A DNA stretch of 64,000 nucleotides from Klebsormidium nitens. Lineage: Eukaryota; Plantae; Klebsormidiophyceae. Positions 2,184 through 61,234 of the stretch are shown here, piece after piece; position 1 is the first letter of the stretch, and every line of letters starts with the position of its first letter. The position numbers and the translations under genes are program-made. Where the stretch lies: positions 11,286 to 75,285 of the forward strand of contig DF237409.1 of the NCBI GenBank assembly GCA_000708835.1. Reading direction: 5' to 3'. The notes beneath the pieces were generated by a model. It saw nothing but the letters and a program-made list of their open reading frames with translations. It made no database searches and was not told the DNA's origin.

Positions 2184-7059
<4,876 letters not shown>

Positions 7060-33817: not shown

Positions 33818-35523
33818 TAATCTTAAACAATCTCCCTCTAATCTGCGCGCTTTGCACTAGGGCTGTTTCTGGAGTCTGTTTACCATGTACAGATCAGTAC
33901 ACCTTGATTAACCTAGGTCACTGGAAAGCGTTGATTTATGTTTCCGTTTACTCACAACCGTCGTTCGTTAGAAGATCTAGGGAACCTTAAACGGCCATGA
34001 TATGAGGTAAATCACATGCAGTTCATCTTTTACCCTAAGTACCTTCAGTGGGCGCTGCTTCACACTCCCAATGACCAAAAAGTAGTACCCCCGACTTGGC
34101 GCAACCTTCTTTGGTACACGTGTTGGGACTCTGCGGTTCATGAGTTGGAAGACTTACCTCGAATTTCAAGCCACATGTGAAAAATGAATGCGCATAAGTT
34201 GCAAATACATACATCGATATCTCAAGACCAGCTTGTTACTTTCAATTGTTTATGCATTGCAATTGGCTTCAGCAATTCAGGCGGCCGCGCCGTTGCCACA
34301 CTGATACAAGATCACGACGTGCATTTTGCATTGCACGTGGGTCTGAGATTGTGTTTCGTATACCTACCAATGCTCTTGGTTGCAGCGAGAACGTGATTTT
34401 TGCATGCTGTGAGCTCGCATGTAAACTAGGCTATCTAGGTCAGCGCTGCATTCAAGATTCCCTGATGCTTCCGGTTCCGCTTACTTAAATGCCGCTGATC
34501 CGTTGTACTTTCCGCTGTTTGGTCGCTTGGGATATGTCGGAATGCCTCGAGGCAAGATCGACGGCCTAGATAGCATTCCTGCGAGGCTCAAGCGCGATCC
34601 CATGAACGTCGGCGCCGTATGTCACACTTCCAATCGGAAGCGTTCGATCTTTTGACGGACGACGGCGAGTTGAAGTCGGAGGTTACGAGTGAGCGCGGGT
34701 ACTTCTTCGATTCGACACAACTACCACTTCTGAAGCATGCTTTTGCTCGAGTTCACCGTCGAAGGCCTCAATATTCTTGAGCGGTTGACAGCGGCCTGCG
34801 GTTGTCGGCTCAGCGTTCAGCCGGCATTGCATCCGCGGCAGTCATACCCCTCGATCTGCGGTTCTAGATACGCAGGCAGCTCCTTGCAACTTGTCGGCAG
34901 CTGCATTTTGCGCAAAGACCAAAAATGCAGAGTGAATGCGGCCCTGCTTCTGTCACGGCAATGAGTGCTTGAGCGCCATAAGGGCGGGGGCAGCCCGCGG
35001 TCTTTTGAACTGCCCGCTGATCAGCAGCCGACCAGAAGCGAAAGCTGACAAAAGCATAGGTTACAAACTGCAGTCATGAAGTTGACAGTGAGAAGTTGCC
35101 ACCCGACTCCAACAAGCTCAAGGTACCTGAAGAATTCACAAGTCAGGGAGAGCTACTGCGGGCTGCTTTGAGCTTGAGCTACTTAAGTCGGCAGCAGCTC
35201 GCATTTCCACAATTGTCAATCTGAAGTTCGAGTAGAGCAGACCTTAGAAGGTCACCAGTAAGCGTGCGAGCTTTTCAGAAGTTTCCCTGATCTTTAGGAT
35301 CAAAACTTGGTTCTGCCAAGCAGCATTCTTGCAGCCGATCAGATCTCAGCTGGAACACAGGAAGGTACCTCGCCTTCCTTTGCCCCTTACCGATCCCGCT
35401 TCCCCGCCAAGAAGACGGAGCATTCTTTCAGCTCTGTGCTACATCTTCTTCGGATCAGCTCGATCTGCATACAAGCTTACTGGGGCGCAGAAATATAAGA
35501 GTGGATCCTTGCTGTCTGTCAAG

Positions 35524-38500
35524 ATGAGGGCCAGCACTGCTTCCAAGGCGTTGCTCCTGCTGGCGCTCTTTGCGCTAGCCAGCGTGCATGGTGAGGTTCT
35601 TGTACCTGCTTCACTTTTGTTTCTTCTGTTTTTTGTCTTTCCTGCTAAGCTTTGAGCTTTCTCTGCAAAGCCCTGACCTTTTTGCTGGCTTTATCCTCTG
35701 TCTGCTCAGCCTCATCACATTGGCGAACTTTACTTCTGCAAGTGAGGATAACATCAGCTGCTCCATGATGGCAGTATTCCTGAGGTATTTTCCAATCAGT
35801 TTCGGTCCTCAGAGCTCTTGCTGTGAGAAAGAAGTCACAACCTTGGGAGAGGAGCTTGGTTGCTGACATACAAACGTCGATCATTGTGCTGACCAAATTG
35901 AAGGCCTCTCTATGGTCAAATTCAGCTTCTTTCATTGTCATCCTTCTCTCAATCGTGGGATTCCTTTGATCTAGTTTGCCTAGAAGAAGATAAATGCGCT
36001 GCAGAAGGTCTTACATCGATTGCAGAGTGTGTTTGCTTCGATTGATACAATCAGGTCTTGGGAGTACTGGCATGGGGCACTCATCACACATTTTTAAGCA
36101 ATAGCTTCACACTTAGCAGACATCTGGAAAGTTTTGGTTGAGCAGGGTGAAAGTCAGGAAGGCTCAATTGCTCTCAACCAGATGAAAGCACTTCTACATA
36201 AGCTTTGGGGGAACCGTCTTCGCAGTATATCACAAGAAAGCCAAAGGGGGCCATTCTGAGGACATACATCAAGGTTCGCTGCTGCCAGAAGCTCCTACAG
36301 GAGCGTAAGCAAGTGGGGCAATGCATGACAGCTGCTAACGAGCCAGTCAAGCTGGGGCTGACGTTTCACTACTATGACTTTTTGCAGCCCAAATACAACG
36401 GGATGATGGCACCAACCGACAAGGTGAGCACTCAGCCAGCTGCTGATCTGATCATAGATGATGATGTTTCCCATTGGCTGGTGTTTCTCTAAACTCTGTT
36501 GAACACCCCTATGAGATCGCCACAGCAGATGAATATTCAGGTTCTGGAGTTATCTAGACTTTTAGGGCATGTTCTGAACAGTATCTGGCATCTCCTGTCT
36601 CTCAACCTGCACTTAGCCTATCCTGATTGATGCCCAGTTCTAATTGAGTTTATGTAATTTGACATAATCGGAGCACTTTTTTCTGGAATTATTCTTTACG
36701 TGTCTCATCAGACTCTTCAAGGCCTCTGCTCATTCCGATCTAGGACAGTGCTTACTGTGCTTAATCCCTCACTGTTCAACTCCCATCTATGGCCGCCCCC
36801 CTCAGCAAATCCAGCTCTATCAACCTCGTCTACTGTGCTCTGCTCACACCCTCGCTAACCCCACTCTTAATCCACTCCCCTAACCCTAGCTAACCTGGCT
36901 CCTAATCCCTGCAGAACTGGAAGAAGAGAGCTCCGGCCAGTCCCGCAAGTTCCTGATGTCCAAGGCCCGCACCGCCGCGCTCGCTGCCGAGAAGAAGTGG
37001 AACGAAACTCACCACCCAAAGACCGGCAAAGCCCCCGCCCCCGCTCCCGGCCCGGTTAAGGGTTCCATCAAGAACCCGACGACTACCAAGGACGGCCTAG
37101 CGGAAATCTCGGAGCTTACCGTGATTAACGTCGGCGCCGGGCTGGTTCCGTTTCCTGTGCCCAAGCCCGTCGGCGCGGGAGTCAACGGCAAGGGGAACAA
37201 CGGCAAGGGAGCCCCCGCCCCCGCCCCGGTGGGGCGAGTCAGTGACATCAATATCACGCAGGTTGCGATGTGAGTGGCTTGACCTCAACTGGAGTAGAAT
37301 CCTCAAGATTGTCTGCTGACGAATGCTCTTTTCAAAGAATCCTCAAAGTGATTTGTCGAGAGAGCGACGGTGAAGCTTGCAAAACGAGCTGAAAGCTTGA
37401 GAACTTTCAGTCAGATTGTCTGAGCTGACAGCAAACAAACGAAGCATGTTTCCTTGCACGTCCTTCGACGTCGTCCGATTGCAGAAGACCGCGATTGACG
37501 CTTGAACTTCACAGAATGTATACTCGAAGTCGCTTCGTCATCCTTTTCCTGGACACGTTTTCTCGTTGCTTCTTTGCGGTGTCTCGAGTGAAAATTCGAA
37601 TAATTCTAACCATCAGTAACCAAAGGAACAAATTTTGCATCACTAATATAACTACACTGTGTTTGAGAAAGAAGAATGTCCTGAAGCTCAACGATGTCTG
37701 GCAATCTCTTGCAGTGTGGTCCAGAACGCGGGCGTGAAGGGCAGTCTGGCTGAGATCGAGGAGGCCATCAAAAACGGAACAGCGTCAGGAAACACGCTCG
37801 GGGCAGTCCTCCAGTCGCTCGTCCTGGGCGTCAACGCAACAGTCCCCAGCGGTGACGCTTTGGCAACCGGTGAGTGCTCGAAACTCTTGACATTTGAAAA
37901 CAGGGGAAGAGCGAATTTCTGGTTGTGGCAGCCTATCCTGAAACGACATGTTTCGTTTCTTAGTGTCTATGCGTACCCTAGCAAGAAGGCCGAAGGGGTT
38001 GTAGAAAAGGAGGCAGAAAGCAGAGCAAGCTCGCGGAATGGAACGATCTCAAAGCAGAATTCATTTAATTTTTCAAGAAGTCGATGTTGCAAATTTCTGA
38101 AGAAGTAGCTGTGCCGATGACACACTTTTTAAATGCGCTTCCATCCGTCCGTGACCCGCCTTCCGTTTCTCTTCCAACCGTTGAAACAACGATTAAAAGC
38201 AGCTCATATTAAGAAACCCGTCTCACCAGCATGCAAGAAGAGCCAAAGCAGACGGGCACACGACTAAAACAATCTCGTTTCTTTCCCCCTTCAGGCTGCG
38301 TCTGTCCCTTCGTGTACAACCCGGTGTGCTCAGAGGGCATCACCTTCTCCAACGCCTGCTTCGCGGGATGCGCCAACGCGACCAACGTCACAGACGGCGC
38401 CTGCGGTACGTTCCTACTTCACAGCTTCTTACAGCGAATCCTCTGGGCAACGGGGCCGAGTTTCTGCCAACTGTTTCTCAGCTAGTAATAACGGCAGATT

Positions 38501-41500
38501 TGTTCCCTCTTTTGTGAGTAAACAGTTGAGTGCGCACTTCTCACACGCGCTTCGGTCAGCCTCCTCACGCTTGCATTCGTTTATTCGGCGCTGCTGCGCT
38601 TACCTTTCGACAGCCTTCGACCGTATCCGCAATTTCCCAGCTCCCTGCTTTCTCACTCCCGTTCTCGCATTCTGAACCCTTCCCCCTCCCTTTTACAGAA
38701 ATAGCCACCCCCAACCCTACCGCCCCGGCCCCTTGCGACCCCGTCCCGTCTCCCTCCCCGGTCCCGTCTCCCTCTCCTTCCCCCTCCCCCCTCTGCGAGG
38801 GCGGCAGCGAGACCCCCACTCCCGGGTCTCCCAGCACCCTGGGCGTCCAGGTTCCCAACGCCGCCAGCCCCCAGCCCTCCGCCTCCCCCTCCGCATCTCC
38901 CGAGCCCTCCCCTTCGTCCCCGGCTCTCCCCTCCGCCTCCCCGGTTCCGTCCCCCTCTAGTTCCCCGGCTGCCTCTCCCTCCGCCTCCCCCGAGCCCTCC
39001 CCTTCCTCGTCCCCCTCCCCTCTCCTTCCCCGGTCCCTTCCCCGTCGAGCTCCCCGTCCCCTCCCCTCCGCGGAGCCTTCCCTCCCCCTGCCTTCTGCTT
39101 CCCGGTTCCTCCCCTCCGCCGAGCCATCTTCGTCCCTCTGCCGTCAGCATCCCGCTTCCCTCCCCCTCTGCGGAGCCTTCCTCGTCTCCCGTCCCCTCCC
39201 CCTCCGCTCAGCCGTCGGCTTCTCCGGTCCCCTCCCCCTCTGCGGTGGCGTCTCCTTCCCCCCTCCCCAGCCCGAGCGCCGTTGCCAAGCCCCCCAGGGG
39301 CAGCAACCCCGGCGGCACCCCTCAGGGCAACCCCGTGACTGAGGCTCCCGCGCCAGGTAAGCGCTGCTTAAATTTGCGTGAACAATGGAACTCTTTGTGA
39401 GCGTGCAAGTCCGGAGCAGTCTTTCCGTACATAAACACACGAATCACACAGAAGTTGTGATTCGACTCGCTGCGATGCTTACGTAAGAGAGGGTAGTTCT
39501 GCTCGTATGGAGTCCGCTCTGCAGATTGACCCGATTACAAACAACAACTTCTGTTCTGCCGGGCTAACCGGAACACAGCACCTTCCATCTGCTTGATTTG
39601 TCGAAGCAAACTGCTGACCTGAGATTGTCGAATTCTGCAGCTCCTGGCTACCAGCCCCCGACCCGCGTCCCCAACCCCCCTCCCCCCCGCCCCACCAAGG
39701 GCGTCGTCTCCCCCGTCGACACCCCCGGCGAAGCCCCCGGCAGCGCGCCATCTGGCAGCCCCACCAACGCGCCAAGCGGCAGCCCCACCGACGCGCCAAC
39801 TGGCAGCCCCACCGACGCGCCAACTGGCACCCCCACTGACACGCCAAGCGGCAGCCCCACCGACGTGCCAGCTGGCAGCCCCGGGAACGCGCCAGCTGTT
39901 GCCCCGTCGCCCGTCGGCACCGACCGCCCCCAGCCGTGCCTGGATGCCAACAATACCCACACCCCCGCTGACGGCCCCGCGCCATTCTCCATGCCCGGAT
40001 ACGCCCTTCCCCCCACAATGGCGAGCAACGGCCCCGCCCCCGCCCCGGGGGGTCCCAGCGCGGCTCCTTCCGGCTCCCCCACAGGCGCCCCCGCCCCCTT
40101 GAACAGCGTACCGTCGACTCCCGGGGGGGAGCCCACGAACGCCCCGACTTCGACTCCCACTGCCACCGACACCCCCTCAGGGACGAACACCCCCTCGGGA
40201 ACGAACAGCCCCTCAGGAACAAACACCCCCACGGGCACTGACACCCCCTCAGGGACGAACACCCCCTCAGAAACCAAGACCCCCTCTAGCACTTCAACCC
40301 CCTCCAGCACCGACACCCCCACAGGAACGAACACCCCCTCAGGAACCAACACCCCCTCTAGCACTTCAACCCCTTCCAGCACCAACACCCCCTCAGGGAC
40401 GAACACCCCCTCGGGAACCAACACCCCCGCGGGCACTAACACCCCCTCAGGGACGAACACCCCCTCAGGAACAAACACCCCCTCTAGCACTTCAACCCCT
40501 TCCAGCACTGACACCCCTTCAAGCACTAACACCCCCTCCGGAACGAAGACCCCCTCAGGCACCGACACCCCCGCAGGAACCAACACCCCTTCCAGCACTT
40601 CGACCCCCTCCGGCACCAACACCCCCTCAGGAACGAACACTCCCTCTAGCACTTCGACCCCCTCGGGAACGAACACCCCCTCAGGAACCAGCGCCCCATC
40701 TGGCACTTCGACCCCCTCTGGCACCGACACCCCCTCTGGAACAAACACCCCCTCGGGAACGAACACCCCCTCTGGCACTGACACCCCCTCAGGAACGGAT
40801 ACCCCCTCGGCAACGGGTACCCCCTCCGGCACCGACACCCCCTCTAGCACTTCGACTCCCTCAGGCACGAACACTCCCTCGGGCACGAACACCCCCTCAG
40901 GAACCAACACCCCCTCAGGCACTGACACCCCCTCAGGCACCAACACTCCCTCAGGAACCAACACCCCCTCAGGCACTGACACCCCCTCAGGCACCAACAC
41001 CCCCTCAGGCACCAACACCCCTTCAGGCACGAACACCCCNNNNNNNNNNNNNNNNNNNNACGGCACTCGACACCCCTCACGGCACCAACACCCCCTCAGG
41101 CACCAACACCCCTTCAGGCACGAACACCCCCTCCGGCACCACCGCTCCCCCCGCCAAGACCACGGCCCCCACCCCCCAGGCCACCAAGAACGGCCCCATC
41201 GGGAGCCCCCCCGACTTCGGCTCCCCCGCCGGCGAGCCCACCAACTCGACCCTCGCGCCGGTCCCCACCAAAACCCCGACCGGCACCCACACCCCGACCG
41301 CGACCCCCAAGGCGACTACGGTACCGAGCGCGACCACCAAGCCTGGTTCCAACACCCCGGGGTCTGTCACACCCGCTCCTGGTGCCACTACCCCCCCGGT
41401 AGCGACCCCCGGTTCGACCACCCCCGGCGCAACCCCGGTCACAACCCCGACCGTTACGATGGCCACCAGGCCCCCGGTTCAGACCCCCGGGCCGACTACT

Positions 41501-43517
41501 CCCGGCGCCACCGCCGCCCCTGGTGCCACCCCCGTCCCGACCACTCCCGGCAGTACACCGGTCTCGACTCCCACCGTCACAATGGCGACGCAGCCCCCGG
41601 TTGGGACCCCCGGACCGGGCACTCCGACCGGAACGAACACCCCCACCGGAACGAACACCCCCACTACCCCCGGTGCTTCTCAGCCGGCGCCCACCCCCAA
41701 GGCGACGCTCCACGGAACGCCCAGCGGAACCGGGTCGACCCCGGGGACCCACGTGCCACCGAGCGACGGACGCCCCGAGCCCTGCACAACCGGGAACGGC
41801 ACGAGCTCCTCAGCCAAGGGCGATCGTGAGTTGACCCAGACATTTTTACTTGTTTGATTTTAAGACAAATTGGTGGGGCCAATGAGACCTTAGAGACCTT
41901 TGCTGTCCGCATATGAACGAGCGTGCAGAGTTAAGGTTAAGGTCTGCAGTAAAACTTCTGCGCTTCTTCTTCGAAATTCTTTTTCAAAGTACTTCGGATG
42001 CCAAAAAGACGCTTCCGTAATACACGATAAAGCAAGCTATCACCGAAGTTCAACCAAGAACTTTTCAGATTCAGCAGTCTCGCCAGTTGTGGGACAAAGC
42101 CGAACCTTTTGACTGAGAGCTTCTCTTCGAACCGTGCAGCTCACTTCGTCGGCAAGCACGGCGAGAAATTCGACTTCAACGGCGAGCCCGGCCAGTCGTA
42201 CTGCCTGATCGCCGACAAGAAGATCCACATCAACATGCACGTCTTCGGCGGCAGGAGAGAGGGCACCACGGTTAGTGCTTACCCGCTTTCCTTACCGGCC
42301 ACTCGTATTGGCCAATGTTCGCTTCTTAGCATTCCTTCGTCTCTTCGTCTCAGACTACTCCTAGAAATTGCAAGAAAATTGCCACTGCTTTCCACTGGAT
42401 GGCACGTCTCTGGAACTTAAAATACATCTCTGGAACAGACACAGATCCGTTCTCAAAATCTGTCAAAAGTCCTGACAGTACTCACCTGAACCCCGGCTAA
42501 CCCTTCCTTAATCCTCCCCGCAGTACATCGACGAAGTCGGCATCCTGTACAAGGACATTGAGATCTACGTCGCCGCCAAGTCCGCTGAGGGCACCAAGTG
42601 GCGCGACTTCCAGGGGGCCGTTTCCGTCAACGGAATCGAGCTCCCCGCTTCCGACGTTGACATGACCGTCGAGAATGTCGCCATCTCCCGCAACAGGACG
42701 TCGGTGCGCGTGACCGCCCCCGGCTGGTTCGACATCACGATGGACATCGCGCGCGCGAGCTTCTGGCAGAACGGCCCCGGAGCTAACTTCGTAAGTTGAC
42801 GCTCCTGTTCTCTTCAACTGTCTTGGACTTCGTACTCAGCAACGGTCCTGTGTCCGCAACGGTCCTGTGTCCCTTTCCTCATTTTACGAAACAATCTGGC
42901 ATTGAGGGGAGTGCTAGAAGGCAGAAAACGTCATATTGGCTCAAGAAATTGATTGGAAAAGGTCAATAAGTTCTGAACCAGGTTCTCCGTTTTACCTGAC
43001 TAGGAAGGCTTTGTCAAACGCGTCTGTTCTTATCCTTCAGACGAGCACAAATGTTCTGTCTCTCAATTTCACCTCTTTTCACGACCCCAGCTTCGAGATA
43101 CCAAGAATTTCCTGTTCCCGTTTACCTGAACCCTCGAATTATCACTCACCCACACTTCTCCCCCCGCCGCAGATCAACTTCAAGGTCTCCCAGCTGCGCG
43201 TGACCCCCACCGTGCACGGCGTGCTCGGACAGACCTACCGCGAGAGCGACCGCACGTACAAGAAGATGGCGCGCGCCGAGGTGTCTGCCGTGCGCGGCAA
43301 CGGCCTCCCCGCTTTCATGGACGGCTCCGAGGAGGACTACGAGACGAGCGGGATCATGAGCGCGGACTGCAAGTTCGGCAAGTTCCAGATGGTCAGCCAG
43401 GTGGAGAAGAAGACCAACAGTTCGGGGGGGAGGAGACTGCTGGCGGCGGAGGGAGAGGATAAGATGGTCGTCGATGCCGGCTGCGTTGGGTTCGGGAATG
43501 AGGTCCGGTGCGAGTAA
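35524..43517 (+). CDS. Large secreted mucin/HRGP-like glycoprotein: signal peptide, Kazal domain, Ser-Pro repeats, Pro/Thr/Ser repeats, GDPH motif and root-cap (LEA-related) domain
   Basis: Exons 35524-35590 (MRASTASKALLLLALFALASVH), 36915-37269, 37715-37869, 38295-38405 (Kazal CVCPFVYNPVCSEGITFSNACFAGC...C), 38699-39356 (SP-rich, with apparent homopolymer frameshifts), 39641-41825 (PTS repeats, spans an N gap), 42140-42270, 42524-42790 and 43173-43517 (GDPHFVG...FDFNG...YCLIAD..IHINMH...VHGVLGQTY...YETSGIMSADCKF). Confidence 0.8.
38745..39280 (+). repeat. Ser-Pro (SPSPS/SAEPS) coding low-complexity repeat
   Basis: C-rich TCC-CCC repeats inside the 38699-39356 exon. Confidence 0.85.
39745..39888 (+). 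repeat. 24-bp coding repeat, octapeptide [A/T/V]P[S/T/A]G[S/T]P[T/G][N/D], 6 units
   Basis: Translation reads APSGSPTN APSGSPTD APTGSPTD APTGTPTD TPSGSPTD VPAGSPGN. Confidence 0.85.
40168..41140 (+). repeat. 18-bp coding minisatellite, hexapeptide TPSGT[N/D/S], about 50 units; true length unknown because of a gap
   Basis: The ACCCCCTCAGGAACGAAC-type unit is repeated in tandem and interrupted by Ns at 41040-41059. Confidence 0.95.
41040..41059. other. Assembly gap (20 N)
   Basis: Run of N inside the minisatellite. Confidence 1.
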
Positions 43518-45305
43518 GGGTTTAGCCGGTGGTTATCACTGACTGCATCTTCGAAAGATGGAAAAGAGAGAGACAAGCAGATTGAGAAGTTGAGAGCTTT
43601 AGTGTAACATGAAACCCAACCTAGAAATAGGTGAGAGGCCTACGGACTAGGGAGACAGAGCGATCTCCCAAGTAACTGTTACTGGAATGATTACAGCACG
43701 GTCTGGTGATAGGCAGCATACAGGAAACACCGTTGCATAGGACACGTATTTATCAAAGGAGCATAAGGCTCAAAATGCGGAGGCGTCAGTGAACAGATCG
43801 TTCACAGGGGCGGCAGCGTTTGCAACTAGCAAGCAGCTGAGAACTCCGCAGGCTTAGTAGAATTTTTAACACTACTGCCCACGTAGGAACTAACCAGCAG
43901 ACAGACAGCCTGACATTCGCTTTTCATAATACAATATGAACACTTGGAACTTCTGGCTTCAGAGGTAACTAAACATTTGTGAACCAGACGAGCAGCTGAC
44001 CAAGGAAATCAACGCTCAATTCAGAGTTTATTCGTGTGCAAGCCCCCGTGCAAGCTTCATTGTCTCTGCAAAAGACGATGTCTCAATTCAATACATCCTC
44101 GAAATCAGTCATAGGAGGGAGTTGCTTGGCCACATTGTGGGATCGGCTAGCATGTGCATTGCTTACCTCGATGATCATTGGACATGAGTACATGGTTACA
44201 ATTTTCTCCACAAATTGTCTCTTCACTCGAGCAAGCAGATGATCATGTGCAGAGTCCACTGAATGGTGCTCCTCTTCTACAATGCTATGAAGGTGCACAT
44301 GCAGAATCCAGATGGTGCCACTGCCGTTCGTGCATAGCCCTCTGAGCCACACAATTGCAGATGAAGGTTCGCTTGATAGCAGTAACTTCGAGCAGAACAT
44401 GGTGCCCGACCAGCCCAGAGAGCTGGAGCAGCTTGTAGCATTCCCCTTGGATGCATTGCAGCTGGAAGAAGGTTGCTGCAAGCTTGCACGTTCTGCTGAT
44501 CAGCGAAGTTTCGAGCACTTGCATAAAAGCTGCCCTAGCAGACGCTAGAGCCTGAACCAGCGCACCGCGCCATGGCTTCTTGGCTTGATGATTGATAGAT
44601 CTGCAATGCAGGAGGGTTTCACATGCATTTTCCTCGGCAATTGGCTTCAATCAAATTGTTTGACGGCAAAACGATTCTTGACAAACGGCAGAATCGGTCA
44701 AAGCGGGCCTCTAAATCATATACGGGTTTGAGTCTTCGAGACAAGGAACCGGCAGTCAACCGTCACCCTGGACTTTGAAGCCAACGCAGAATTTTATATA
44801 CTTTGATATTCAGCCGGGAGGGCAGCTCGATGAGGAGGGCAGCAGCTCAGAGCTCCACATCAAAGCGCAGTTCTAAACATGAGACAGAAAGACTCAGAGC
44901 GCTCAACTTTTCACATACAGATCCACCAACTCTTACTTGTAGAGGATGTCATGAATTTTTGCAGGTTCATCAAGCTTGCCAGTTTGATATCTGTTGGTAG
45001 CGGACAAGGGCCTTGAGCTGGCTTGCCCACCCATCCTAACCCAACACCAAATAGATCGGGTCGCTTCTCACGCTTCGTCTGGCCCTCAATTGAAGTCACC
45101 GCCAGCTTGTTGTGTACAGAACTTCATTCTCCATCTCAGGAGCTATTCTGGAGATTGGTCCTAGCCCGTGCTCTATCACCGAGCAACAAGTCCTGTTCTA
45201 AGTCTCTTTGAGGGCACCTGGGAAAACGGCTCGCATCTGTATCCCCCTTAGCTAGCTGTAAAACCGCTTTTTCGAGCTGTCGTGCTTTCGTCAAGTGCTT
45301 GTCCA

Positions 45306-48111
45306 ATGGCTGCCCCCCGCCGCAGCAGCAGCACAGCAGCGGACGCCGCCCGAGCTGATCCGGGAAGGAAGGTGACTTGCATTGACAAGGCATTGACATT
45401 CTGGTGATGCTTCATTCTGCCTTTGCTGCCTGCTCAGATAGCATCATGGAGTCAGGCTGGAAAGTGAGTGTGGGTTGATCTTTTTCATAACTTTCAAAGA
45501 GGGCGTAATTGAGCTGAGGGTCACTTGTACGATCGTTGTAGATGCTCCCTGATCAGTCAGCATGGAGCAGGACAGAATAGTACCTCCCTCTCGGACACTT
45601 TCACAGTCCCGTTGACGGAGGCCTTCCCCAATTATCAGCCATCGGCAGTGCTAACAGCCAATAAGGAAGTGAGAGAGAGACACTGATTCATATAATCGGA
45701 ACAGGTCGTCCAGGACCACAGCTCACAGTTGCCACGTATATCTGTGCAGTTCCTTTACGCCCCCCCTGCAGCCGACCCCGCCATGCGCCCCCCCCGCTCC
45801 ACCTCCTTCACTGAAATATAGACGAGCGACCCGACAGTAGGGCCCTGCGAGGAGCCTCAAGCGCAGCGGCCAGTCTAGTCGGCAGTACTCTGGACGAACG
45901 GGCGGGGCCTTCCAGGTTGGGGGATCAGAGATGGGCGGCGTCTCTGCAGAACCTAGAGGATATGGGAACGACGCTCGAGAGTTACCAGAAAGCGCTGCTG
46001 AGTAATGTGGTATATCTAGATGAGGAGGCGTATGGGAAGGGGGTTAAAGTGGCGGGGCGTGGGCGGGCAGTTCAGGTGGGGGGCTGAGCACCATTGAGTC
46101 GGACTTTCCTGTCTTGCTCTTCCTTCAAGCCCCAACTACCTTGTTGGTTCTTGAAGTTCCTGTCAGATTCCTCGTCCAACTTTGTTGCTTCTTTTGTTAG
46201 TTCTCTTGTTCCAGGGCTGCTCTTCTGCTTTGAAATCTCTTTCAGAAGGTTCCCGCTTTACCGAGCTCCTTTACTCCTTCAATAAACCGTCGTTCCAGCC
46301 ACCTTCGATAAGTGGGGATTGGTCTATTGTCTACTGTAGTTTACCTTTTTGACTGAGAAAAAGGGACACTGCAACGGCCTTGATTGATATCTGACAAAGC
46401 TCACTTTTGACAGCATTCTGACCCTTTTTGCCCAGCTGTCCACGTGTCTGCCCAGGCCTATCACCGAGATTTGATTTGTAGAGCGTTTTAGGTGCCTGAC
46501 CCCAGTGACAATGGGCGAATTCTTATCTAAGACCTGATTTGCAGAGATCCTTGATGACGGCCTGGCTGTTGTCGTTTTGATCGTGGAGTCCGAGCTGCGG
46601 TGTACGAACCTCCACTTAGCACATCTTAGAACGAACTAAAGCTCGTGTGCAGCAGCACTCTCAACTTCTTCGACTTGTGAATTCCTTTGTCGTTATGTGA
46701 CTCTTCTTTGACACGGGTATCGTCCGCAGCTTTGTGCCCGTAGTCTGATGGTAGCGTAAAAGGCACAAAATTCTGCATTCCGCTTGTCCGTGCTACAACT
46801 TTTGTTGGTTCCTTCTGCCACACAGTGATTCGACTCCACTACTTCAAACATTGTCCGGAATGTCTCATCATCCTCGCTTGTCCACCAAGAATTTCCTCTG
46901 TGTGTTCTACCGCCGAGGGCATGAAATTGAGACCCCCCAAACCGGCCCCTTTCGCAGCCTTTCCATCCGAAGTCGCACATCGAGCTCTGTCGTGAAATGC
47001 CCAGGAGAGGCGGATTCGATGGCTTGAGCGAGAACTAGACGCGTCCATCGAGGCGGCCGCGCGCTCGCGGGAGGAGAAGCGCGCTGCGGAGGTGGCGCAG
47101 CGGGCTGCAGAGGCGCGGGTGAAGGAGTTCCTGGAGGAGCCGGAAAACACGACGAGTGAGTCGGATACCAAGGCGCTGATTTGATAATCTTGTGGCGTTT
47201 TCTTTTCAAAGAAGTACAGTTGTTGAGCTTCTGGTGTTCACTAAGCAAGAAACTACGTCTGGCGAGCTTATGATGTCCACAGAGCATGACACCACGTTCG
47301 ATGAGCTTTTCTCCGTCGTGAACTACAGCTGTTAAGCTTATGGTATTTTCAAGATTCATACAAGTACATTGTTCAGCTGCAACAGTCGTACAGCGGATTC
47401 CACTTACCCAAACCGACCTCGTCTTCAGAGTGACGAGTATCCGTGACACAAGCTGGTGCAACAGTTACAAGAGCGGGCAGAATCGTCAGCCGAAGGGTTC
47501 TTGAAGCTGGATCTGGTTTGGCAGGGTGACGTTCTGCGCTTCTTAGTTGTGCGCTTCTTAGTTTCGAATCAGATTCTGCATCTGACTGAGAAGACCAAAG
47601 CTGATGCACTTGACCAGCTTCACACGCACCTGCGGGCAGCACAGTGCAGCATTTCTTAATTTGAGCCCCTCTTTGTCAATTTGTCATGCTTCTTCGATTG
47701 ATGCATGCTTTGGGCAACAAACCGGATTAAGAGCAGATTCGTCATTTCAAAGTGAGACCGCGGTTAATGGGCATTCTGCATCGTGCGTTCCTTTGGGCCC
47801 TGATTAACTGGGCTTTTGAAAACAGAACCTTTTGAATCTGGCCCATGCTGCTTGGGTGGACGTAGTACGGCCGCCCTGATGGCGGACCACTGTAATTTCC
47901 GACTGAACCGGTAGATTTCAAAAATAAACACGCCGTTGACGTGGCTTTGGGTGCAGGGGTGTTCAAGCTCCACGCGGAAGACCTGCAGCTGAAGGAAGCG
48001 CAGCTGAAAAAGAAGGACGACGAGATTCGGGTGCTGCAGGTGATCATAAGCACCATGAGCAATTCTCCGAAACAGAAACAATCAAGAGTTGGCGTGCATC
48101 CGAATCTGTAA
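45306..48111 (+). pseudogene. Degenerate copy A of the four-exon coiled-coil gene
   Basis: Paralog of 58136-60872. Exon 2 carries a frameshift and an in-frame TAG at 45819-45821 (ACT GAA ATA TAG vs ACT GAT TTC AAA GAC). The exon 3 acceptor is lost (gtgaaat|GCC vs cgtgcag|GCC, near 46998). Confidence 0.8.
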
Positions 48112-48927
48112 ATGAAAACTGATATGCTCTGGGGGATGAGTGGTCCTTGTCAGCGGAATGTGCGATGTCGTCCGCGCGTTTTGCTGACGTGGCCCGTTGT
48201 AGAGATTCGCACGTTCATTGCGTGAAGCTCGCTCGTAATGATGGGAGGAAGCGGAGAGGAAGCGGTCTCCATGCTCTTAAACAATGTGAACATAGACGTA
48301 CGTTTTGATCAATCAGCTTTGCAATATCTATGGGCGCCTCCCGATCAGCTGATTGTCAAACTTAAGCCTGAAGTGAAAGAGACTCCGTTCGCCAAGCGCA
48401 CCAAGGAGCTAGAGAAAATGCAGTGCTCTAGCTGCTTCGAGCATACCCTATACTTTGGTTGCATGGTGGCCATGCTTCAGCTTCTTTTGCCACAATTCCT
48501 GCATGTGTGCAGCTATACAATTTACAAGGCCTAAGCCCTACTCAAGCTCGAAGCGACACTGAGTAGGCTTTCAAGTTCAAGTGGCGCTACGGTTTTTAAT
48601 CACACTCAACCGTCAGTTACAGTATACCTATAAGTGGTACGATATATGAATGTTACACAACAGTACTAACCTATATGCATTCTAGCATAAACATCCGGAC
48701 ATTATACAGTGATGTTTCTACGTACATGGGCGCGTCACCGCAGTGTTATCAAAGTTGGTAGCATCAGCTTGTGAACTGCATTGCAAATTGCTGTGCGGGT
48801 CTAAAGCAGTGACGCAATTGCCCGGCCTAGCTACCGGTTCAGATCTTTGATGTTGTCGAGCTAGATCCTCAAATTGTCGCCCATGGTGCGCCCATGTCAG
48901 TGCGCATGTCGCGACACCAGCAACCTG

Positions 48928-53274: not shown

Positions 53275-53590
53275 TGCCGGACATTCTCTGCTGTCTGCAG
53301 GGGCTGTCCAAACGAGGTCCCATGCATGTCAAATGAATAGACACTGGACGGCACAGCCAATACTCCTTCCTGGGCTATACCGCGCTGCTGGTATAGGTCA
53401 ATCGTGGTTAACCGTGAAAGAAGTTGCGTCTGCTGCAACAAGTTCGATGTGCTGGGGAGCATTCATCTTGGCAGCTGAATGGCGAGAAAGGAGCTTCGGC
53501 AAAGTGGATTGATAAATGCCTTTGCCCAAGATTTGCAGGGTGCTTCTTGAGTTCAGTTTCTCTGCTTAGGGTGACATTGAGCGGCCCTGG

Positions 53591-56366
53591 CGCACCGACA
53601 CCCCAAAAGGAACCAGCGTTTCATCTAGCACTTCGACCCCTTCCAGCACTGACAGCCCCTCAAGAACGAACAACGGATACCCCGTCTAGCACTTCCACCC
53701 CCTCAGAAACAAACACCCCCTCGGCAACGATTATCCCCTCTGGCACCGGCACCCCCTCTAGCACTTCGACCCCTTCGGGCACTTCGACCCCCTCGGGCAC
53801 GAACACCCCTTCAGGAACCAACACCCCCTCAGGCACTTCCACCCCCTCGGGAACCAGCGCTCCCTCCGGCACAACCGCCCCCCCCGCCAAGACCACAGCC
53901 CCCCCGGTCAAGACCACGGCCCCCACCCCCCAGACCACCAAGAACGGCCCCATCGGGAGCCCCCCCGACTTCGGCTCCCCCGCCGGCGAGCCCACCAACT
54001 CAACCCTCGCGCCGGTCCCTACCAAAACCCTGACCGGCACCCACACCCCGACCGCGACCCCCAAGGCAACTACGGTACCGAGCGCAACCACCAAGCCTGG
54101 TTCCAACACCCCGGGATCTGCCACCCCCGCTCCCAGCGCCACTAACTCCCCAATAGCGACCCCCGTTTCGACCACCCCCGGCGCAACCCCGGTCACAGTC
54201 CCGACCGTTACGATGGCCACCAGGCCCCCGGTTCAGACCCCCGGGCCGACGACTCCGTGCGCCAACGTCGCCCCTGGTGCCACCCCCGTCCCGACCACTC
54301 CCGGCGGTACACCGGTCACGGCTCCCACCGTCACAATGGCAACGAATCCCCCGGTTCAGACCCCTGGCCGGCCCAACACCCCGACCGGAACGAACACCCG
54401 ACCGGAACGAACACCCCGAGCGGAACTAACACCCCCACCACCCCCGGTGCTCCTCAGCCGGCGCCCACCCCCCAGGCGGCTTTCCACGGAACGCCCAGCG
54501 GAAACGGGTCGACCCCGGGGACCCACGTGCCGCCGAGCGACGGACGCCCCGAGCCCTGCACGTCTGGGAACGGCACGAGCTCCTCAGCCAAGGGCGATCG
54601 TGAGTTGAATCAGCCTGTTTTACTGACCGTTGAGAGGTTTTGAGGTGGGATTGGAAGCTAGGGACCTCTGCTTTTTGCATACGAGAGAGCGTGCAGAGTT
54701 CGAATTCTGCAGGGATTGTTTCCGATTAAGGTTTGCAGGAAAGGGTTCTTCTGCACTTCTTCGTCGAGTTACTTGCGATGTCAAAGAAACGCTTTCCGGA
54801 CCACACGACAAAGCAAGCTCTCACGGAAGGTCAACAAAAGACCTTTTGAGGTTCAGCAGTCTCGCCAAGTCTGGTACAAAACCGAACATCTGACTGACGA
54901 CTCTCTTCGAATCGTGCAGCTCACTTCGTCGGCAAGCACGGCGAGAAGTTCGATTTCAACGGCGAGCCCGGCCAGTCGTACTGCCTGATCGCCGACAAGA
55001 AGATCCACATCAACATGCACGTCTTCGGCGGCAGGAGAGAGGGCACCACGGTTAGTGCTTACCCGCTTTCCTAGCCGCCACTCGTACTGGCACAGGTTTG
55101 AGAGTTAGCATTGATAATGTCTAGGAAGATTGCTCGACATTTGCTATCGCTTTCCACAGGATGACACCGTTGCATCATCTCTGGAACTTAAGACTCTCTG
55201 CCCAAACCGCGTTCTCAGATCCGAAAGGGAAATTCTCCCGAGAGTTCCATCAATCGCCCTCATCCTCATCTTTCTATCAGAACACGAACCAACACAGCCC
55301 GTTCTCGAAACTCGCCAAAAGACCTTACAGCACTCACCTGAACCCCAGCTAACCCTTCCTTAACCCTCCCCGCAGTACATCGACGAAGTCGGCATCCTGT
55401 ACAAGGACACCGAAATCTACGTCGCTGCCAAGTCCGCTGAGGGAACCAAGTGGCGCGACTTCCAGGGCGATGTTTCCGTCAACGGAATTGAGCTCCCCGC
55501 TTCCGATGTCGACATGACCGTCGAGAATGTCGCCATCTCCCGCAACAGGACGTCGGTGCGCGTGACCGCCCCCGGCTGGTTCGACATCACGATGGACATC
55601 ACGCGCGCGAGCTTCTGGCAGAACGGCCCCGGAGCAAACTTCGTAAGTTGACGCCCTACTTCTCTTCAGCTGTCTTGGAGTCCGTACTTAGCAACGGTCC
55701 TGTGTCTCTTTCCCTATCTTTGTAAACAATTTTTCATTGAGGGGAGTGCTAGAAGACAGATAACTTCATGTTGGCTCAAGAAATTGAATCCAAAGAGTTA
55801 AGAATATCCTGAGCGAGCTTGTTTGTTTTCTCTGACTAGGGCTTTGTAAAAGGTCTGCTTATACTCCTCAAACGAGCACAAACGTTTTCCCTCAGAACCT
55901 CACCTCTTTTCACAACCCCAGCTTCGAGATCCAAAATCCCGTGACAGAGTCCTGAAAGAGACTCTCGATTCCTGGAACCCTCAAATAATCACTCACCCGC
56001 TCTTCTTTTACCCCCCCGCAGGTCAACTTCAAGGTCTCCCAGCTGCGCGTGACCCCCACCGTGCACGGGGTGCTCGGACAGACCTACCGCGAGAGCGACG
56101 CACGTACAAGAAGATGGCGCGCGCCGAGGTGTCAGCCGTGTCCGGCAACGGCCTCCCGGCATTCATGGACGGGTCCGAGGAGGACTACGAAACGAGCGGG
56201 ATCATGAAGCGCGGACTGCAAGTTCGGCAAGTTCCAGATGGTCAGCCAGGTGGAGAAGAAGACCAACAGTTCGGGGGGGAGGAGACTGCTGGCGGCCGAG
56301 GGGGAGGATAAGATGGTCGTCGATGCCGGCTGCGTTGGATTTGGGAACGAGGTGCGGTGCGAGTAA
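53591..56366 (+). pseudogene. 5'-truncated copy B of the mucin-like root-cap gene
   Basis: Exons ...-54599, 54920-55050, 55376-55642 and 56022-56366 parallel copy A. No signal-peptide, Kazal or SP exons are present. There are 1-nt indels near 53660, 54398, 56100 and 56207, several of them in homopolymers. Confidence 0.65.
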
Positions 56367-60872: not shown

Positions 60873-61234
60873 CGTGCATGCGAATCCTTAATTGAAAAGC
60901 AGCGATGCCTTAGCGAAAGATTGGTCGTCTGCGCGTTATGTCGATGTGGCCCGTCAAAACGGATTGCAGGAAGCTCCCTTGTTTCATTGTATTGAATATA
61001 GGAATAATTGTCCTCATGCACGTATATCCGACGGTCGGACATATAGAATGGATTGGAAGTATGGCTGTCACGGTACATACGATTATAATCCAGTACACAA
61101 TGTACTCGCTTTGGAACTGCATCGAAGCTCTAGCTATTGTCGCTAGACACGTTAAGTCAAAAGTGTCGGGCCCGGCCCCGTTAATGATGTTGTTGACTCG
61201 ACTGGCCAAAGTCGCTTGGAATATCAGCAATCTG

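What the first reader, a model, noticed from the sequence alone, without database searches (positions are those of the whole stretch)
35524..43517. Algal mucin-like protein: Kazal inhibitor, very long PTS stalk and root-cap domain in one secreted chain
The layout is signal peptide, a globular segment, a Kazal protease-inhibitor module, an SP tract, three kinds of Pro/Thr/Ser repeat over more than 700 aa, then a GDPH-initiated root-cap domain. This parallels animal mucins (PTS plus VWD/GDPH) but is built from plant parts. It is a candidate mucilage, adhesion or desiccation-sheath protein with its own protease protection. I do not recognise this domain combination as a described family.
Basis: partly seen in the sequence, partly recalled or inferred. 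Interest (0 to 1): 0.75.

Follow-up and report, generated by a model that had tools for sequence, protein, structure and literature searches.

The report
Kazal, mucin stalk, self-cleaving-type root-cap domain
A Klebsormidium gene encodes a secreted protein with a Kazal protease-inhibitor module and a roughly 940-residue sugar-bearing stalk, ending in a plant "root-cap" domain that has the fold and the Gly-Asp-Pro-His cutting motif of animal mucin D domains. The assembled copy contains sequence defects, and expression has not been shown.

Summary
The gene has ten exons rather than nine, because a 36-nt micro-exon at 36388-36423 was missed.

As assembled, the chain is not one open frame:
- Four deletions in C-runs shift the frame inside the Ser-Pro exon.
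- The N20 gap changes the frame inside the TPSGTN array.

An orthologous contig from a related Klebsormidium (L003, continued by L002) carries every exon in one frame with no gap. All splice sites and phases match. Exons are 84-98% identical against 43-60% for introns, and dN/dS is 0-0.4. The single-chain architecture is therefore real in this lineage, and the window's breaks are probably artefacts of 454/Newbler assembly.

The GDPH motif is split by a phase-1 intron, which ties the stalk exon to the root-cap exons. A modelled family member has the VWD fold (Z 14.8), with DPH at the mucin/RGM cleavage position.

The closest relatives, from a K. nitens paralogue to ferns, share the plan head, Pro-rich stalk, GDPH, root-cap, but their head is a beta-helix. 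The Kazal head is new.

No transcript evidence could be obtained. The scan had already noted the root-cap/VWD link on other pieces of this genome.

The parts
35524..35590 (+). Exon 1: start codon and signal peptide (22 codons plus G), with a phase-1 donor GTGAGG
   Evidence: The peptide is identical in L003 and near-identical in L004. dN is 0 and dS 0.44.
36388..36423 (+). Exon 1b: a 36-nt micro-exon, phase 1-1, encoding (A)QIQRDDGTNRQ.
   Evidence: It is conserved with an AG acceptor and a GTGAG donor in L003 (2350-2385, 36 nt) and in L004 (2339-2392, 54 nt).
36915..37269 (+). Exon 2: orphan N-terminal region. It has a conserved helix-like SRKFLMSKARTAALAAEKKWNETH, AP-rich linkers and two N-x-S/T sequons. 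The donor is phase 2.
   Evidence: It is 78% identical in amino acids to L003, with dN/dS 0.31 and all four indels multiples of 3. It has no Pfam family or Atlas look-alike.
37715..37869 (+). Exon 3: continuation of the N-terminal region (51 codons, two sequons), with a phase-1 donor
   Evidence: It is 86% identical in amino acids to L003, with dN/dS 0.16.
38295..38405 (+). Exon 4: one non-classical Kazal domain with six Cys, in the pattern C-x-C-x7-C-x9-C-x3-C-x10-C. The inferred P1 is Phe. The exon is phase 1-1.
   Evidence: Pfam gives Kazal_2 22.7 bits against a cut-off of 22.8. L003 scores Kazal_1 22.2 against 21, and L004 scores Kazal_2 23.2 against 22.8. PDB matches are Anemonia elastase inhibitor at E 1.9e-6, and LDTI at 5.5e-5 over all six Cys.
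38699..39356 (+). Exon 5: Ser-Pro (AGP-type) tract with two conserved Cys near its start, phase 1-1. It carries four frame-breaking deletions in C-runs, at about 39010, 39055, 39133 and 39150.
   Evidence: The orthologous exon in L003 (4522-5265) is 248 codons in a single frame, and the end of the exon is also conserved in L001.
39641..41825 (+). Exon 6: PTS stalk. It holds APSGSPTx repeats, at least 53 TPSGTN units, a PT-rich 41-aa repeat and two conserved non-repeat islands. It ends ..SSSAKGD plus C, before a GTGAGT donor. The N20 gap lies at 41040-41059.
   Evidence: L003 (5544-7163, 540 codons) and L001 read through as a single ORF.
42140..42270 (+). Exon 7: (P)HFVGKHGEKFDFNG..., the first strands of the DPH/VWD-like domain. 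A phase-1 intron splits the Pro codon of GDPH.
   Evidence: It is 100% identical in amino acids to L003 and 81% identical to the K. nitens paralogue P0090, against which it aligns collinearly.
42524..42790 (+). Exon 8: the central beta-sandwich part of the DPH domain (89 codons)
   Evidence: It abuts exons 7 and 9 without gaps on P0090, P0007, P0006 and P0094.
43173..43517 (+). Exon 9: the Root_cap (PF06830) part, then a C-terminal C-x-GFG-x-E-x-x-C tail and the stop codon
   Evidence: Pfam gives 38.3 bits against a cut-off of 27. HMMER against 1.84 billion proteins gives 85 relatives.
53585..56366 (+). Tandem duplicate, copy 2: a degenerate short PTS array plus root-cap exons (E7 54920-55050, E8 55376-55642, E9 56022-56366). 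It has no head exons.
   Evidence: Exons are 95-98.5% identical to copy 1, against 73-79% for introns. Changes are 22 synonymous against 5 non-synonymous. E9 carries a -1 and a +1 indel.

Best explanation
This is one ten-exon gene of Klebsormidium for a secreted mosaic glycoprotein of at least 1,430 codons, plus whatever the gap hides.

Its order is:
- a signal peptide;
- a lineage-specific N-terminal region of about 180 residues;
- one non-classical Kazal domain;
- a Ser/Pro- and then Thr/Pro/Ser-rich stalk of about 940 residues, of the kind that is heavily O-glycosylated in plants and algae;
- a C-terminal DPH/root-cap domain.

The root-cap domain belongs to a streptophyte family that has the VWD fold, with Gly-Asp-Pro-His in the turn between its first two strands.

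Inferred mechanism. As in mucins, FCGBP, RGM and the ITIH heavy chains, the Asp-Pro bond cuts itself in the late secretory pathway or the acidic wall space. This leaves the Kazal-plus-stalk fragment ending in Asp. That fragment would be held on the root-cap domain, released from it, or passed on to a wall glycan. It would present a protease inhibitor in the wall or mucilage layer.

The frame breaks in the window are most likely assembly errors.

Shown here: the exon structure, the modules, conservation and purifying selection, and the family's VWD fold and motif position. Inferred: expression, glycosylation, cleavage, inhibitor activity and location.
For: GDPH is split by a phase-1 intron. The stalk exon therefore ends in GD and cannot stand apart from the root-cap exons.

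L003 is one 8,012-nt gap-free contig, collinear with window 34561-42571. Every splice site and phase is conserved, and every exon reads in one frame. L002 and L001 supply exons 8-9.

Conservation and selection:
- Exons are 84-98% identical, against 43-60% for introns.
- Exon indels are multiples of 3, apart from five. Four are the C-run deletions in exon 5. One is a 14-nt indel in the post-array part of exon 6, which probably reflects arbitrarily chosen alignment ends.
- 58 of 69 intron indels are not multiples of 3.
- dN/dS is 0-0.40.

The downstream part has no start codon or signal peptide of its own, and the Kazal exon is not followed by a stop in the spliced frame.

Exons 7-9 abut exactly on the paralogue P0090 and on land-plant homologues.

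VWD evidence:
- The family profile hits the starts of FCGBP VWD domains, matching GDPHY..FDF.G, at E 3e-4.
- Pfam VWD matches 8 of 39 relatives and ITI_HC_C matches 7 of 39.
- The AlphaFold model of relative P0010 has pLDDT mostly 85-97 (block means 72-97) over residues 290-500.
- Foldseek returns MUC5AC, MUC2, VWF and FCGBP at E 5e-7.
- VIA gives Z 14.8, rmsd 2.5 A over 151 residues, and the next non-VWD-type fold scores Z 3.1.
- The post-cleavage chains of RGMB and FCGBP align from model Pro296.

The genome of strain NIES-2285 was sequenced with 454 plus Illumina and assembled with Newbler (PMC4052687).
Against: As assembled, the reading frame is broken four times in exon 5, and a straight reading stops at 39340-39342.

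The gap makes the frame after 41059 formally unknown.

No transcript and no annotated protein for this locus was recovered. Expression and the joining of the Kazal and root-cap halves on one mRNA are therefore not shown directly.

The fold was modelled on a fern relative, not on this protein.

The window's Kazal exon falls 0.1 bit below Pfam's cut-off.

The Cys that holds the first strand after cleavage in FCGBP sits 4 residues before GDPH. Here the nearest Cys is 13 residues upstream, so the fate of the two fragments cannot be predicted.

Cleavage of a root-cap domain has never been demonstrated. The two papers on the family do not mention it.
Confidence: 0.6

Rival explanations
1. The window's copy is a real broken allele or pseudogene. 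The C-run deletions in exon 5 are genuine. This genome would then make, at most, a truncated signal peptide, Kazal and Ser-Pro protein ending at 39340-39342, and the PTS and root-cap exons would not be translated.
For: There are four frame-breaking differences within 150 nt, and a stop follows in the straight reading. A tandem duplicate exists that could relax selection. Copy 2 also carries frame-breaking indels.
Against: All four are deletions inside C homopolymers, in a 73-77% GC stretch of a 454/Newbler assembly. Downstream exons 6-9 remain open and strongly conserved: exon 7 is 100% identical in amino acids to L003, and dN/dS is low. In copy 2, the stretch between its two indels still encodes the conserved peptide, with mostly synonymous changes. 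That fits sequencing error better than old mutations.
Confidence: 0.15
2. These are two adjacent genes. One is a small secreted Kazal protein (exons 1-5). The other is a separate PTS plus root-cap protein (exons 6-9). The reader fused them wrongly.
For: There is no transcript evidence. The assembled frame ends in exon 5. The tandem duplicate (copy 2) consists of the PTS and root-cap part only.
Against: Exon 6 begins at a conserved phase-1 acceptor. It has no ATG or signal peptide, whereas root-cap relatives have N-terminal signal peptides. Exon 5 ends at a conserved phase-1 donor, with no stop in the orthologue. Exons 1b, 4, 5 and 6, and exons 2+3 taken together, are all phase 1-1 and compatible. 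The same order lies on one contig in a second species. The paralogue and land-plant homologues have the same head, stalk, GDPH and root-cap arrangement in one annotated protein.
Confidence: 0.05
3. It is one protein, but the GDPH site is not cut. The root-cap domain would act as an uncleaved lectin-like, adhesive or oligomerising beta-sandwich, as proposed for the family in the literature. The Kazal-like module would be a structural or binding knot rather than an inhibitor.
For: The literature proposes oligomerisation or lectin-like roles for the DPH domain and never mentions cleavage. Many land-plant members have DPR instead of DPH, and only 19 of 43 relatives have the full GDPH. Kazal domains also occur in non-inhibitory contexts, such as the SLCO transporters among the PDB hits.
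Against: Asp-Pro is invariant and His nearly invariant in the 39-sequence alignment. The motif sits in the same turn as in cleaved VWD domains (PMC10880436). The Kazal loop keeps the canonical C-P-x-x-Y-x-P-V-C form. The inferred P1 differs between close species (Phe against Glu) while the scaffold is unchanged, a pattern typical of active inhibitors.
Confidence: 0.2

Closest known systems
K. nitens KFL_005170020 (GAQ89392.1, 'Root cap family protein') and land-plant homologues: Riccia KAL3691812.1, Sphagnum, Adiantum MCO5581300.1, Ceratopteris KAH7291928.1
   Same: [quoted passage not shown] The DPH-to-HGVLGQ spacing is the same, at 145-149 residues. A phase-1 intron lies at the GDPH motif. 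Exon 7 is 81% identical to the paralogue.
   Different: Their head is a Chlam_PMP-type right-handed beta-helix. Here it is an orphan region plus a Kazal domain, and the window contains no beta-helix at all. The stalk here is far longer and carries a TPSGTN array. The GDPH intron sits one codon later than in the paralogue.
DPH-domain / root cap proteins (PF06830), including the Ancylonema ice-binding protein AnIBP (PMC10796529; bioRxiv 10.1101/2024.01.29.577848)
   Same: They are secreted, with a variable N-terminal part followed by a C-terminal domain of about 250-280 residues that starts with DPH and ends in the root-cap motif. They are restricted to streptophytes.
   Different: Described members have short N-terminal parts of about 100 residues, with AnIBP called the only known exception. 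This one has about 1,180 residues of cargo, including a Kazal domain. The papers do not link the domain to VWD or to cleavage.
Animal gel-forming mucins, FCGBP, MUC4, RGM (VWD domains with GDPH autocleavage)
   Same: They combine a long PTS region with a VWD-fold domain carrying GDPH in the turn between strands 1 and 2. The structural match is Z 14-15 (PMC10880436).
   Different: The C8, TIL and E modules, the cystine-knot and the D-assembly polymerisation machinery are all absent. The Pfam VWD model does not reach threshold. The Cys that tethers strand 1 is not at the equivalent position. The stalk is of plant HRGP type.
[quoted passage not shown]
   Same: The cargo lies N-terminal of an Asp-Pro-His-Phe site, followed by a C-terminal VWD-like beta-sandwich. 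Seven of 39 relatives hit ITI_HC_C, with best E 3.4e-5. ITIH3, ITIH5 and ITIH6 have GDPH between the first two strands (PMC10880436). From general knowledge, the new C-terminal Asp of ITIH is ester-linked to a glycosaminoglycan.
   Different: There are no VIT or VWA domains. No glycan transfer is known in plants. The similarity is below Pfam's cut-off.
Non-classical Kazal inhibitors (leech LDTI, Anemonia elastase inhibitor, rhodniin) and plant AtKPI-1
   Same: They share the six-Cys pattern with one residue between Cys1 and Cys2, and the reactive loop C-P-x-x-Y-x-P-V-C. Plant Kazal inhibitors exist and have antimicrobial activity (PMC12868885).
   Different: Here a single Kazal domain is embedded in a mosaic of more than 1,400 residues, rather than standing alone or in a Kazal array. 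Its activity is untested.

Membership tests
Root_cap / DPH-domain family (PF06830) | The Pfam Root_cap model scores above its gathering score | tested here: met
   Exon 9 scores 38.3 bits against a cut-off of 27, E 1.5e-9.
Root_cap / DPH-domain family (PF06830) | A C-terminal domain of about 250 residues that starts with DPH and is collinear with family members | tested here: met
   GD|PHF lies at the exon 6/7 junction. Exons 7-9 abut exactly on P0090, P0007, P0006 and P0094. The DPH-to-HGVLGQ spacing is 148, as in the closest subfamily.
Root_cap / DPH-domain family (PF06830) | An N-terminal secretion signal | tested here: inconclusive
   The sequence has a hydrophobic core, ALLLLALFALA, followed by SVHG. 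This was judged by eye and is conserved in two relatives. No signal-peptide predictor was available.
VWD domain with GDPH autocleavage | The VWD beta-sandwich fold | tested here: met
   This was shown on a family member (P0010), not on this protein. Foldseek gives E 5e-7. VIA gives Z 14.8, rmsd 2.5 A over 151 residues, and the next non-VWD-type fold scores Z 3.1.
VWD domain with GDPH autocleavage | GDPH lies in the turn between strands 1 and 2 | tested here: met
   The model has strands at 292-294 and 297-299 flanking G294-H297. The cleaved RGMB and FCGBP chains align from Pro296. The family profile aligns gDPHF..FDF.G to the GDPHY..FDF.G motif of FCGBP.
VWD domain with GDPH autocleavage | The Pfam VWD (PF00094) model scores above threshold | tested here: not met
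   The window's exons give no hit. Eight of 39 relatives hit weakly, with best E 3.4e-4.
VWD domain with GDPH autocleavage | The Asp-Pro bond is actually hydrolysed | not testable with these tools
   This needs protein chemistry.
Gel-forming mucin | D assemblies (VWD plus C8, TIL and E) and a C-terminal cystine knot for polymerisation | tested here: not met
   Pfam finds only Kazal and Root_cap. Only 4 Cys follow the GDPH site.
Kazal inhibitor (MEROPS I1) | The six-Cys Kazal pattern is recognised by the family models | tested here: met
   The window scores Kazal_2 22.7 against 22.8, 0.1 bit short. Orthologues L003 and L004 pass. Phmmer against the PDB gives E 1.9e-6, and LDTI aligns over all six Cys.
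Kazal inhibitor (MEROPS I1) | Tight-binding inhibition of a serine protease through the P1 loop | not testable with these tools
   P1 = Phe (Glu in two relatives) is inferred from the alignment to LDTI and AEI.
Chimeric hydroxyproline-rich glycoprotein (AGP-like) | Clustered SP/AP/TP glycomodules in a secreted protein | tested here: met
   The orthologous exon 5 is 35% Pro and 30% Ser. Exon 6 is 26% Thr, 21% Pro and 18% Ser.
Chimeric hydroxyproline-rich glycoprotein (AGP-like) | Hyp O-glycosylation; a GPI signal in classical AGPs | not testable with these tools
   Glycosylation cannot be tested here. The protein ends ..VRCE, with no hydrophobic C-terminal tail.
ITIH heavy chain | VIT and VWA domains upstream of the DPHF site, and ITI_HC_C above threshold | tested here: not met
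   There are no VIT or VWA domains. ITI_HC_C matches relatives only below its cut-off (P0010 scores 18.8 bits against 27).

The most novel reading that the evidence does not exclude
The root-cap/DPH domain would be a general C-terminal self-cleaving transfer module of streptophytes that works like the ITIH pro-domain. It would cut at Asp-Pro and hand the new C-terminal Asp of whatever cargo lies upstream to a wall or mucilage polysaccharide as an ester. The cargo here is a Kazal inhibitor on a glycosylated stalk. In other family members it is a beta-helix, PAN modules, or an ice-binding domain. The result would be covalent anchoring of proteins in the extracellular matrix. This would explain why the domain is always C-terminal, behind variable cargo (43 of 43 relatives).
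Probability: 0.2. Interest if true: 0.85.

Novelty: new variant of a known kind. Interest (0 to 1): 0.6.

Why it matters
Root-cap (PF06830) proteins are a family of about 2,000 streptophyte proteins with no known mechanism.

This gene and its relatives show a recurring plan: cargo, an extended glycosylated stalk, Gly-Asp-Pro-His, then a VWD-fold domain. The plan runs from Klebsormidium to ferns. It points to mucin/ITIH-type self-cleavage as a testable mechanism.

The Kazal cargo suggests one use, namely placing a protease inhibitor in the wall or mucilage of a terrestrial alga. The inferred specificity residue changes between close species.

The gene also shows mosaic assembly from phase 1-1 exons, as in animal extracellular proteins.

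Practically, the locus shows that the current assembly mis-renders such genes, through homopolymer frameshifts and gaps in the repeats.

Tried and rejected
- **Word search with the exon 9 ORF.** It found nothing because my length window (110-348 aa) excluded the 105-aa fragments and any long model. That search was wasted.
- **Metagenome scan with exon 2.** No confirmed relative.
- **Word search with the root-cap region of Riccia P0007.** It returned only five beta-helix-type proteins and missed known relatives such as P0010. Its silence about an annotated protein for this locus therefore means little.
- **The window's own annotated protein or any transcript-derived protein.** None was found by any route.
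- **First PDB query with the Kazal exon.** It was one base out of frame. It was corrected.
- **Single-exon PDB searches with exons 8 and 9.** They gave only a weak repeated match to a bacterial adhesin. I reject this as compositional.
- **ESM Atlas with exon 2.** No credible look-alike.
- **An extensin-like reading of exon 5 in the alternative frame.** Rejected, because the orthologue reads as Ser-Pro repeats in one frame.
- **A beta-helix head hidden in the window, also upstream of copy 2.** None found by tblastn.
- The spliced protein was never joined. It was therefore not searched, folded or looked up as a whole. The SEA-like idea for exons 2+3 could not be tested, and no splice-junction probe was used.

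Full report
**What is in the sequence.**

The region is eukaryotic. GC-rich exons (57-77% GC) are separated by introns of 38-52% GC. Reading the three forward frames and the splice sites gives the following model on the + strand:
- E1, 35524-35590: the ATG and a signal-peptide-like sequence, with a phase-1 donor.
- E2, 36915-37269.
- E3, 37715-37869.
- E4, 38295-38405: Kazal.
- E5, 38699-39356: Ser-Pro tract.
- E6, 39641-41825: PTS.
- E7, 42140-42270.
- E8, 42524-42790.
- E9, 43173-43517.

Comparison with relatives revealed one further exon, E1b, at 36388-36423. It is 36 nt and phase 1-1. It is conserved with its splice sites in two related contigs, where it is 36 and 54 nt long.

Exons 1b, 4, 5 and 6, and exons 2+3 taken together, are all phase 1-1. 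This is the symmetric pattern of exon-shuffled extracellular mosaics.

**The modules.**

*Kazal.* The in-frame exon has six Cys in the non-classical spacing. It scores Kazal_2 22.7 bits against a cut-off of 22.8, and the two orthologous exons pass their cut-offs. It matches solved Kazal inhibitors: Anemonia elastase inhibitor at E 1.9e-6, and leech LDTI over all six Cys. By alignment to these, P1 is Phe.

*Stalk.* E5 is Ser-Pro rich. E6 is 26% Thr, 21% Pro and 18% Ser, with repeats of 24, 18 and 123 nt and at least 53 TPSGTN units.

*Root_cap.* Exon 9 scores 38.3 bits against a cut-off of 27.

*GDPH.* E6 ends ..AAG GGC GAT C|GTGAGT and E7 begins CAG|CT CAC TTC. The motif G-D-P-H is therefore split by a phase-1 intron. 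This alone ties the stalk exon to the root-cap exons.

*N-terminal region.* The 'globular' N-terminal region (E1b-E3) has no Pfam family and no Atlas look-alike.

**The gap, tested first.**

The N20 at 41040-41059 lies inside the 18-nt array, and both flanks are array units. Before the gap the coding frame is the one that starts at 39643. After it the coding frame starts at 41060. A gap of 1 mod 3 would keep the frame, and 20 does not. The first 25 or so bases after the gap look like an error-prone contig end.

Two orthologous contigs read the whole equivalent exon as one ORF without a gap. These are L001 (about 470-2040) and L003 (5544-7163, 540 codons). The discontinuity is therefore an assembly artefact, and only the copy number of the array is unknown.

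The K. nitens paralogue has a 1,716-N gap in its own stalk. Such repeats evidently break this assembly.

E5 enters in one frame and must leave in another. Aligned to L003, the window has in-frame indels of 6, 84, 3 and 3 nt. It also has four frame-breaking deletions of 1, 2, 1 and 1 nt, at about 39010, 39055, 39133 and 39150. All four lie inside C-runs. Read straight through, E5 stops at TGA 39340-39342.

In L003 the same exon is 248 codons in one frame.

The reference genome of strain NIES-2285 was made with Roche 454 plus Illumina and assembled with Newbler (PMC4052687). From general knowledge, 454 data undercall homopolymers. I put the chance that these deletions are artefacts at about 70-80%.

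**Is it one gene?**

No transcript could be obtained, so the argument is comparative. L003 (Logan assembly of SRR23617307, 8,012 nt, no N) is collinear with window 34561-42571. It carries E1 to E7 and the start of E8. L002, from the same run, continues with E8-E9.

The evidence from these contigs:
- Every acceptor, donor and phase is conserved, and every exon is in frame.
- Exons are 84-98% identical, against 43-60% for introns.
- Exon indels are multiples of 3 apart from five. Four are the deletions above. One is a 14-nt indel in the post-array part of E6, probably due to arbitrarily chosen alignment ends.
- 58 of 69 intron indels are not multiples of 3.
- dN/dS is 0 (E1), 0.31 (E2), 0.16 (E3), 0.40 (E4), 0.35 (start of E6) and 0 (E7).
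- L004, a third and more distant relative, has E1, E1b, E2, E3, the Kazal exon and the start of E5.

E6 has no start codon or signal peptide of its own. The Kazal exon has no stop in the spliced frame.

I put the single-gene architecture in this lineage at about 0.85, and an intact, expressed copy in this genome at about 0.65.

**Relatives.**

HMMER with exon 9 against 1.84 billion representatives gave 85 hits. The best are 90%-identical ORF fragments from metagenome contigs of related Klebsormidium.

The next is the K. nitens paralogue GAQ89392.1 (719 aa). After it come Marchantia, Riccia, Adiantum, Ceratopteris and Diphasiastrum proteins.

The paralogue and the full-length Riccia, Adiantum and Ceratopteris proteins share one plan, as does a Sphagnum protein found. 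It runs: signal peptide, a Chlam_PMP-type beta-helix head, a Pro-rich stalk, GDPHF(V/I)GKHGE.FDF, then the root-cap domain. The Marchantia and Diphasiastrum entries are fragments.

The window's exons 7-9 abut on these proteins without any gap. The window itself holds no beta-helix.

Among 39 full-length relatives the N-terminal cargo is PAN, PMP, LRR, Ole e 1 or HYR, and never Kazal. In 43 of 43 relatives with a complete domain, the DPH domain is C-terminal.

**Root-cap domain and VWD, tested here.**

- A profile of 39 relatives hits FCGBP at the starts of its VWD domains, with gDPHF..FDF.G aligned to GDPHY..FDF.G, at E 3e-4.
- Eight relatives hit Pfam VWD and seven hit ITI_HC_C, all below threshold.
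- The AlphaFold model of Ceratopteris P0010 has pLDDT mostly 85-97 (block means 72-97) over residues 290-500, with strands on both sides of GDPH.
- Foldseek returns only VWD proteins at the top, at E 5e-7.
- VIA gives Z 14.8, rmsd 2.5 A over 151 residues. The listed VWD-type folds stay at Z 10.7 or above, and the next fold scores Z 3.1.
- The cleaved chains of RGMB and FCGBP align from the Pro of DPH.

Yeshaya et al. place the cleavable GDPH in that same turn. They also note that ITIH3, ITIH5 and ITIH6 have it in an unannotated VWD-like domain (PMC10880436).

The two papers on the 'DPH domain' describe a beta-sandwich behind variable N-terminal parts. They mention neither VWD nor cleavage. No paper in the library combines 'root cap' with VWD or GDPH.

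The fold was modelled on a relative.

**Mechanism.**

Shown: a secreted-type mosaic with a Kazal domain, a long stalk of O-glycosylation type, and a C-terminal VWD-fold domain carrying GDPH.

Inferred: self-cleavage at Asp-Pro, which would give a Kazal-plus-stalk fragment ending in Asp. The tethering Cys of FCGBP, 4 residues before GDPH, is not matched here, where the nearest Cys is 13 residues upstream. Release, non-covalent retention or ITIH-like transfer to a glycan all remain possible.

The inferred P1 is Phe in the window and Glu in L003 and L004, on an otherwise unchanged scaffold. This fits an active inhibitor under diversifying pressure, but three sequences prove nothing.

**Also in the window.**

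The segment 40843-50572 is tandemly duplicated at 53624-63434, at 78-81% identity. Copy 2 has a short, degenerate array and the three root-cap exons, but no head.

Its exons are 95-98.5% identical to copy 1, against 73-79% for introns. There are 22 synonymous and 5 non-synonymous codon changes. Even so, E9 carries a -1 and a +1 indel.

The relatives show no second copy within 10 kb downstream.

**Verdict.**

The finding is a real and interesting mosaic. It is a new cargo variant of the DPH/root-cap family and a good test case for the family's proposed self-cleavage. It needs cDNA and resequencing before the single chain can be taken as fact in this genome.

The genus rests on the closest paralogue and on earlier notes of this scan. 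I did not verify the species independently.

Noticed in passing
window 40843-50572 and 53624-63434: A tandem segmental duplication of about 12.8 kb, at 78-81% identity. It starts inside the PTS array and includes the root-cap exons and the downstream genes. Copy 2 (53585-56366) lacks head exons. It has a degenerate array with a stop, and -1/+1 indels in exon 9. Yet its exons show purifying selection against copy 1: 22 synonymous against 5 non-synonymous changes.
   Followed up: partly
L005 6513-8228 (K. nitens DF237466.1, locus of KFL_005170020): The paralogue's stalk holds a 1,716-N assembly gap, and the locus does not translate to the annotated 719-aa protein. The annotated stalk is probably incomplete.
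   Followed up: partly
window 41822-41825 / 42140-42141 and L005 about 8595 / 8780: Both paralogues have a phase-1 intron at the GDPH motif, but one codon apart. It lies in the Pro codon here and in the Asp codon in KFL_005170020.
   Followed up: yes
window 38303-38311; L003 4155-4163; L004 Kazal exon (about 4470-4577): The inferred Kazal P1 and P1' residues differ between close relatives: Phe-Val here, and Glu-Ile in two relatives. The rest of the domain is nearly unchanged.
   Followed up: partly
window about 39920-40060 and about 41190-41270: Two non-repetitive islands inside the stalk are conserved in L003, L001 and copy 2. One is ..RPQPC..PAPFSMPGYALPPT.. and the other is ..SPPDFGSPAGEPTN... 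A similar RP(Q/E)PC motif recurs 13 residues before GDPH.
   Followed up: no
window 41060-41085: The first bases after the gap deviate from the repeat unit, with an extra C that gives ..DTPHGTN.. instead of ..TPSGTN... This looks like a low-quality contig end.
   Followed up: partly
L001 10726-11838 and L002 7390-8601: The related contigs carry a conserved ORF of 370-403 aa about 7 kb downstream of the root-cap gene. It has no counterpart in the window, so synteny ends there.
   Followed up: no
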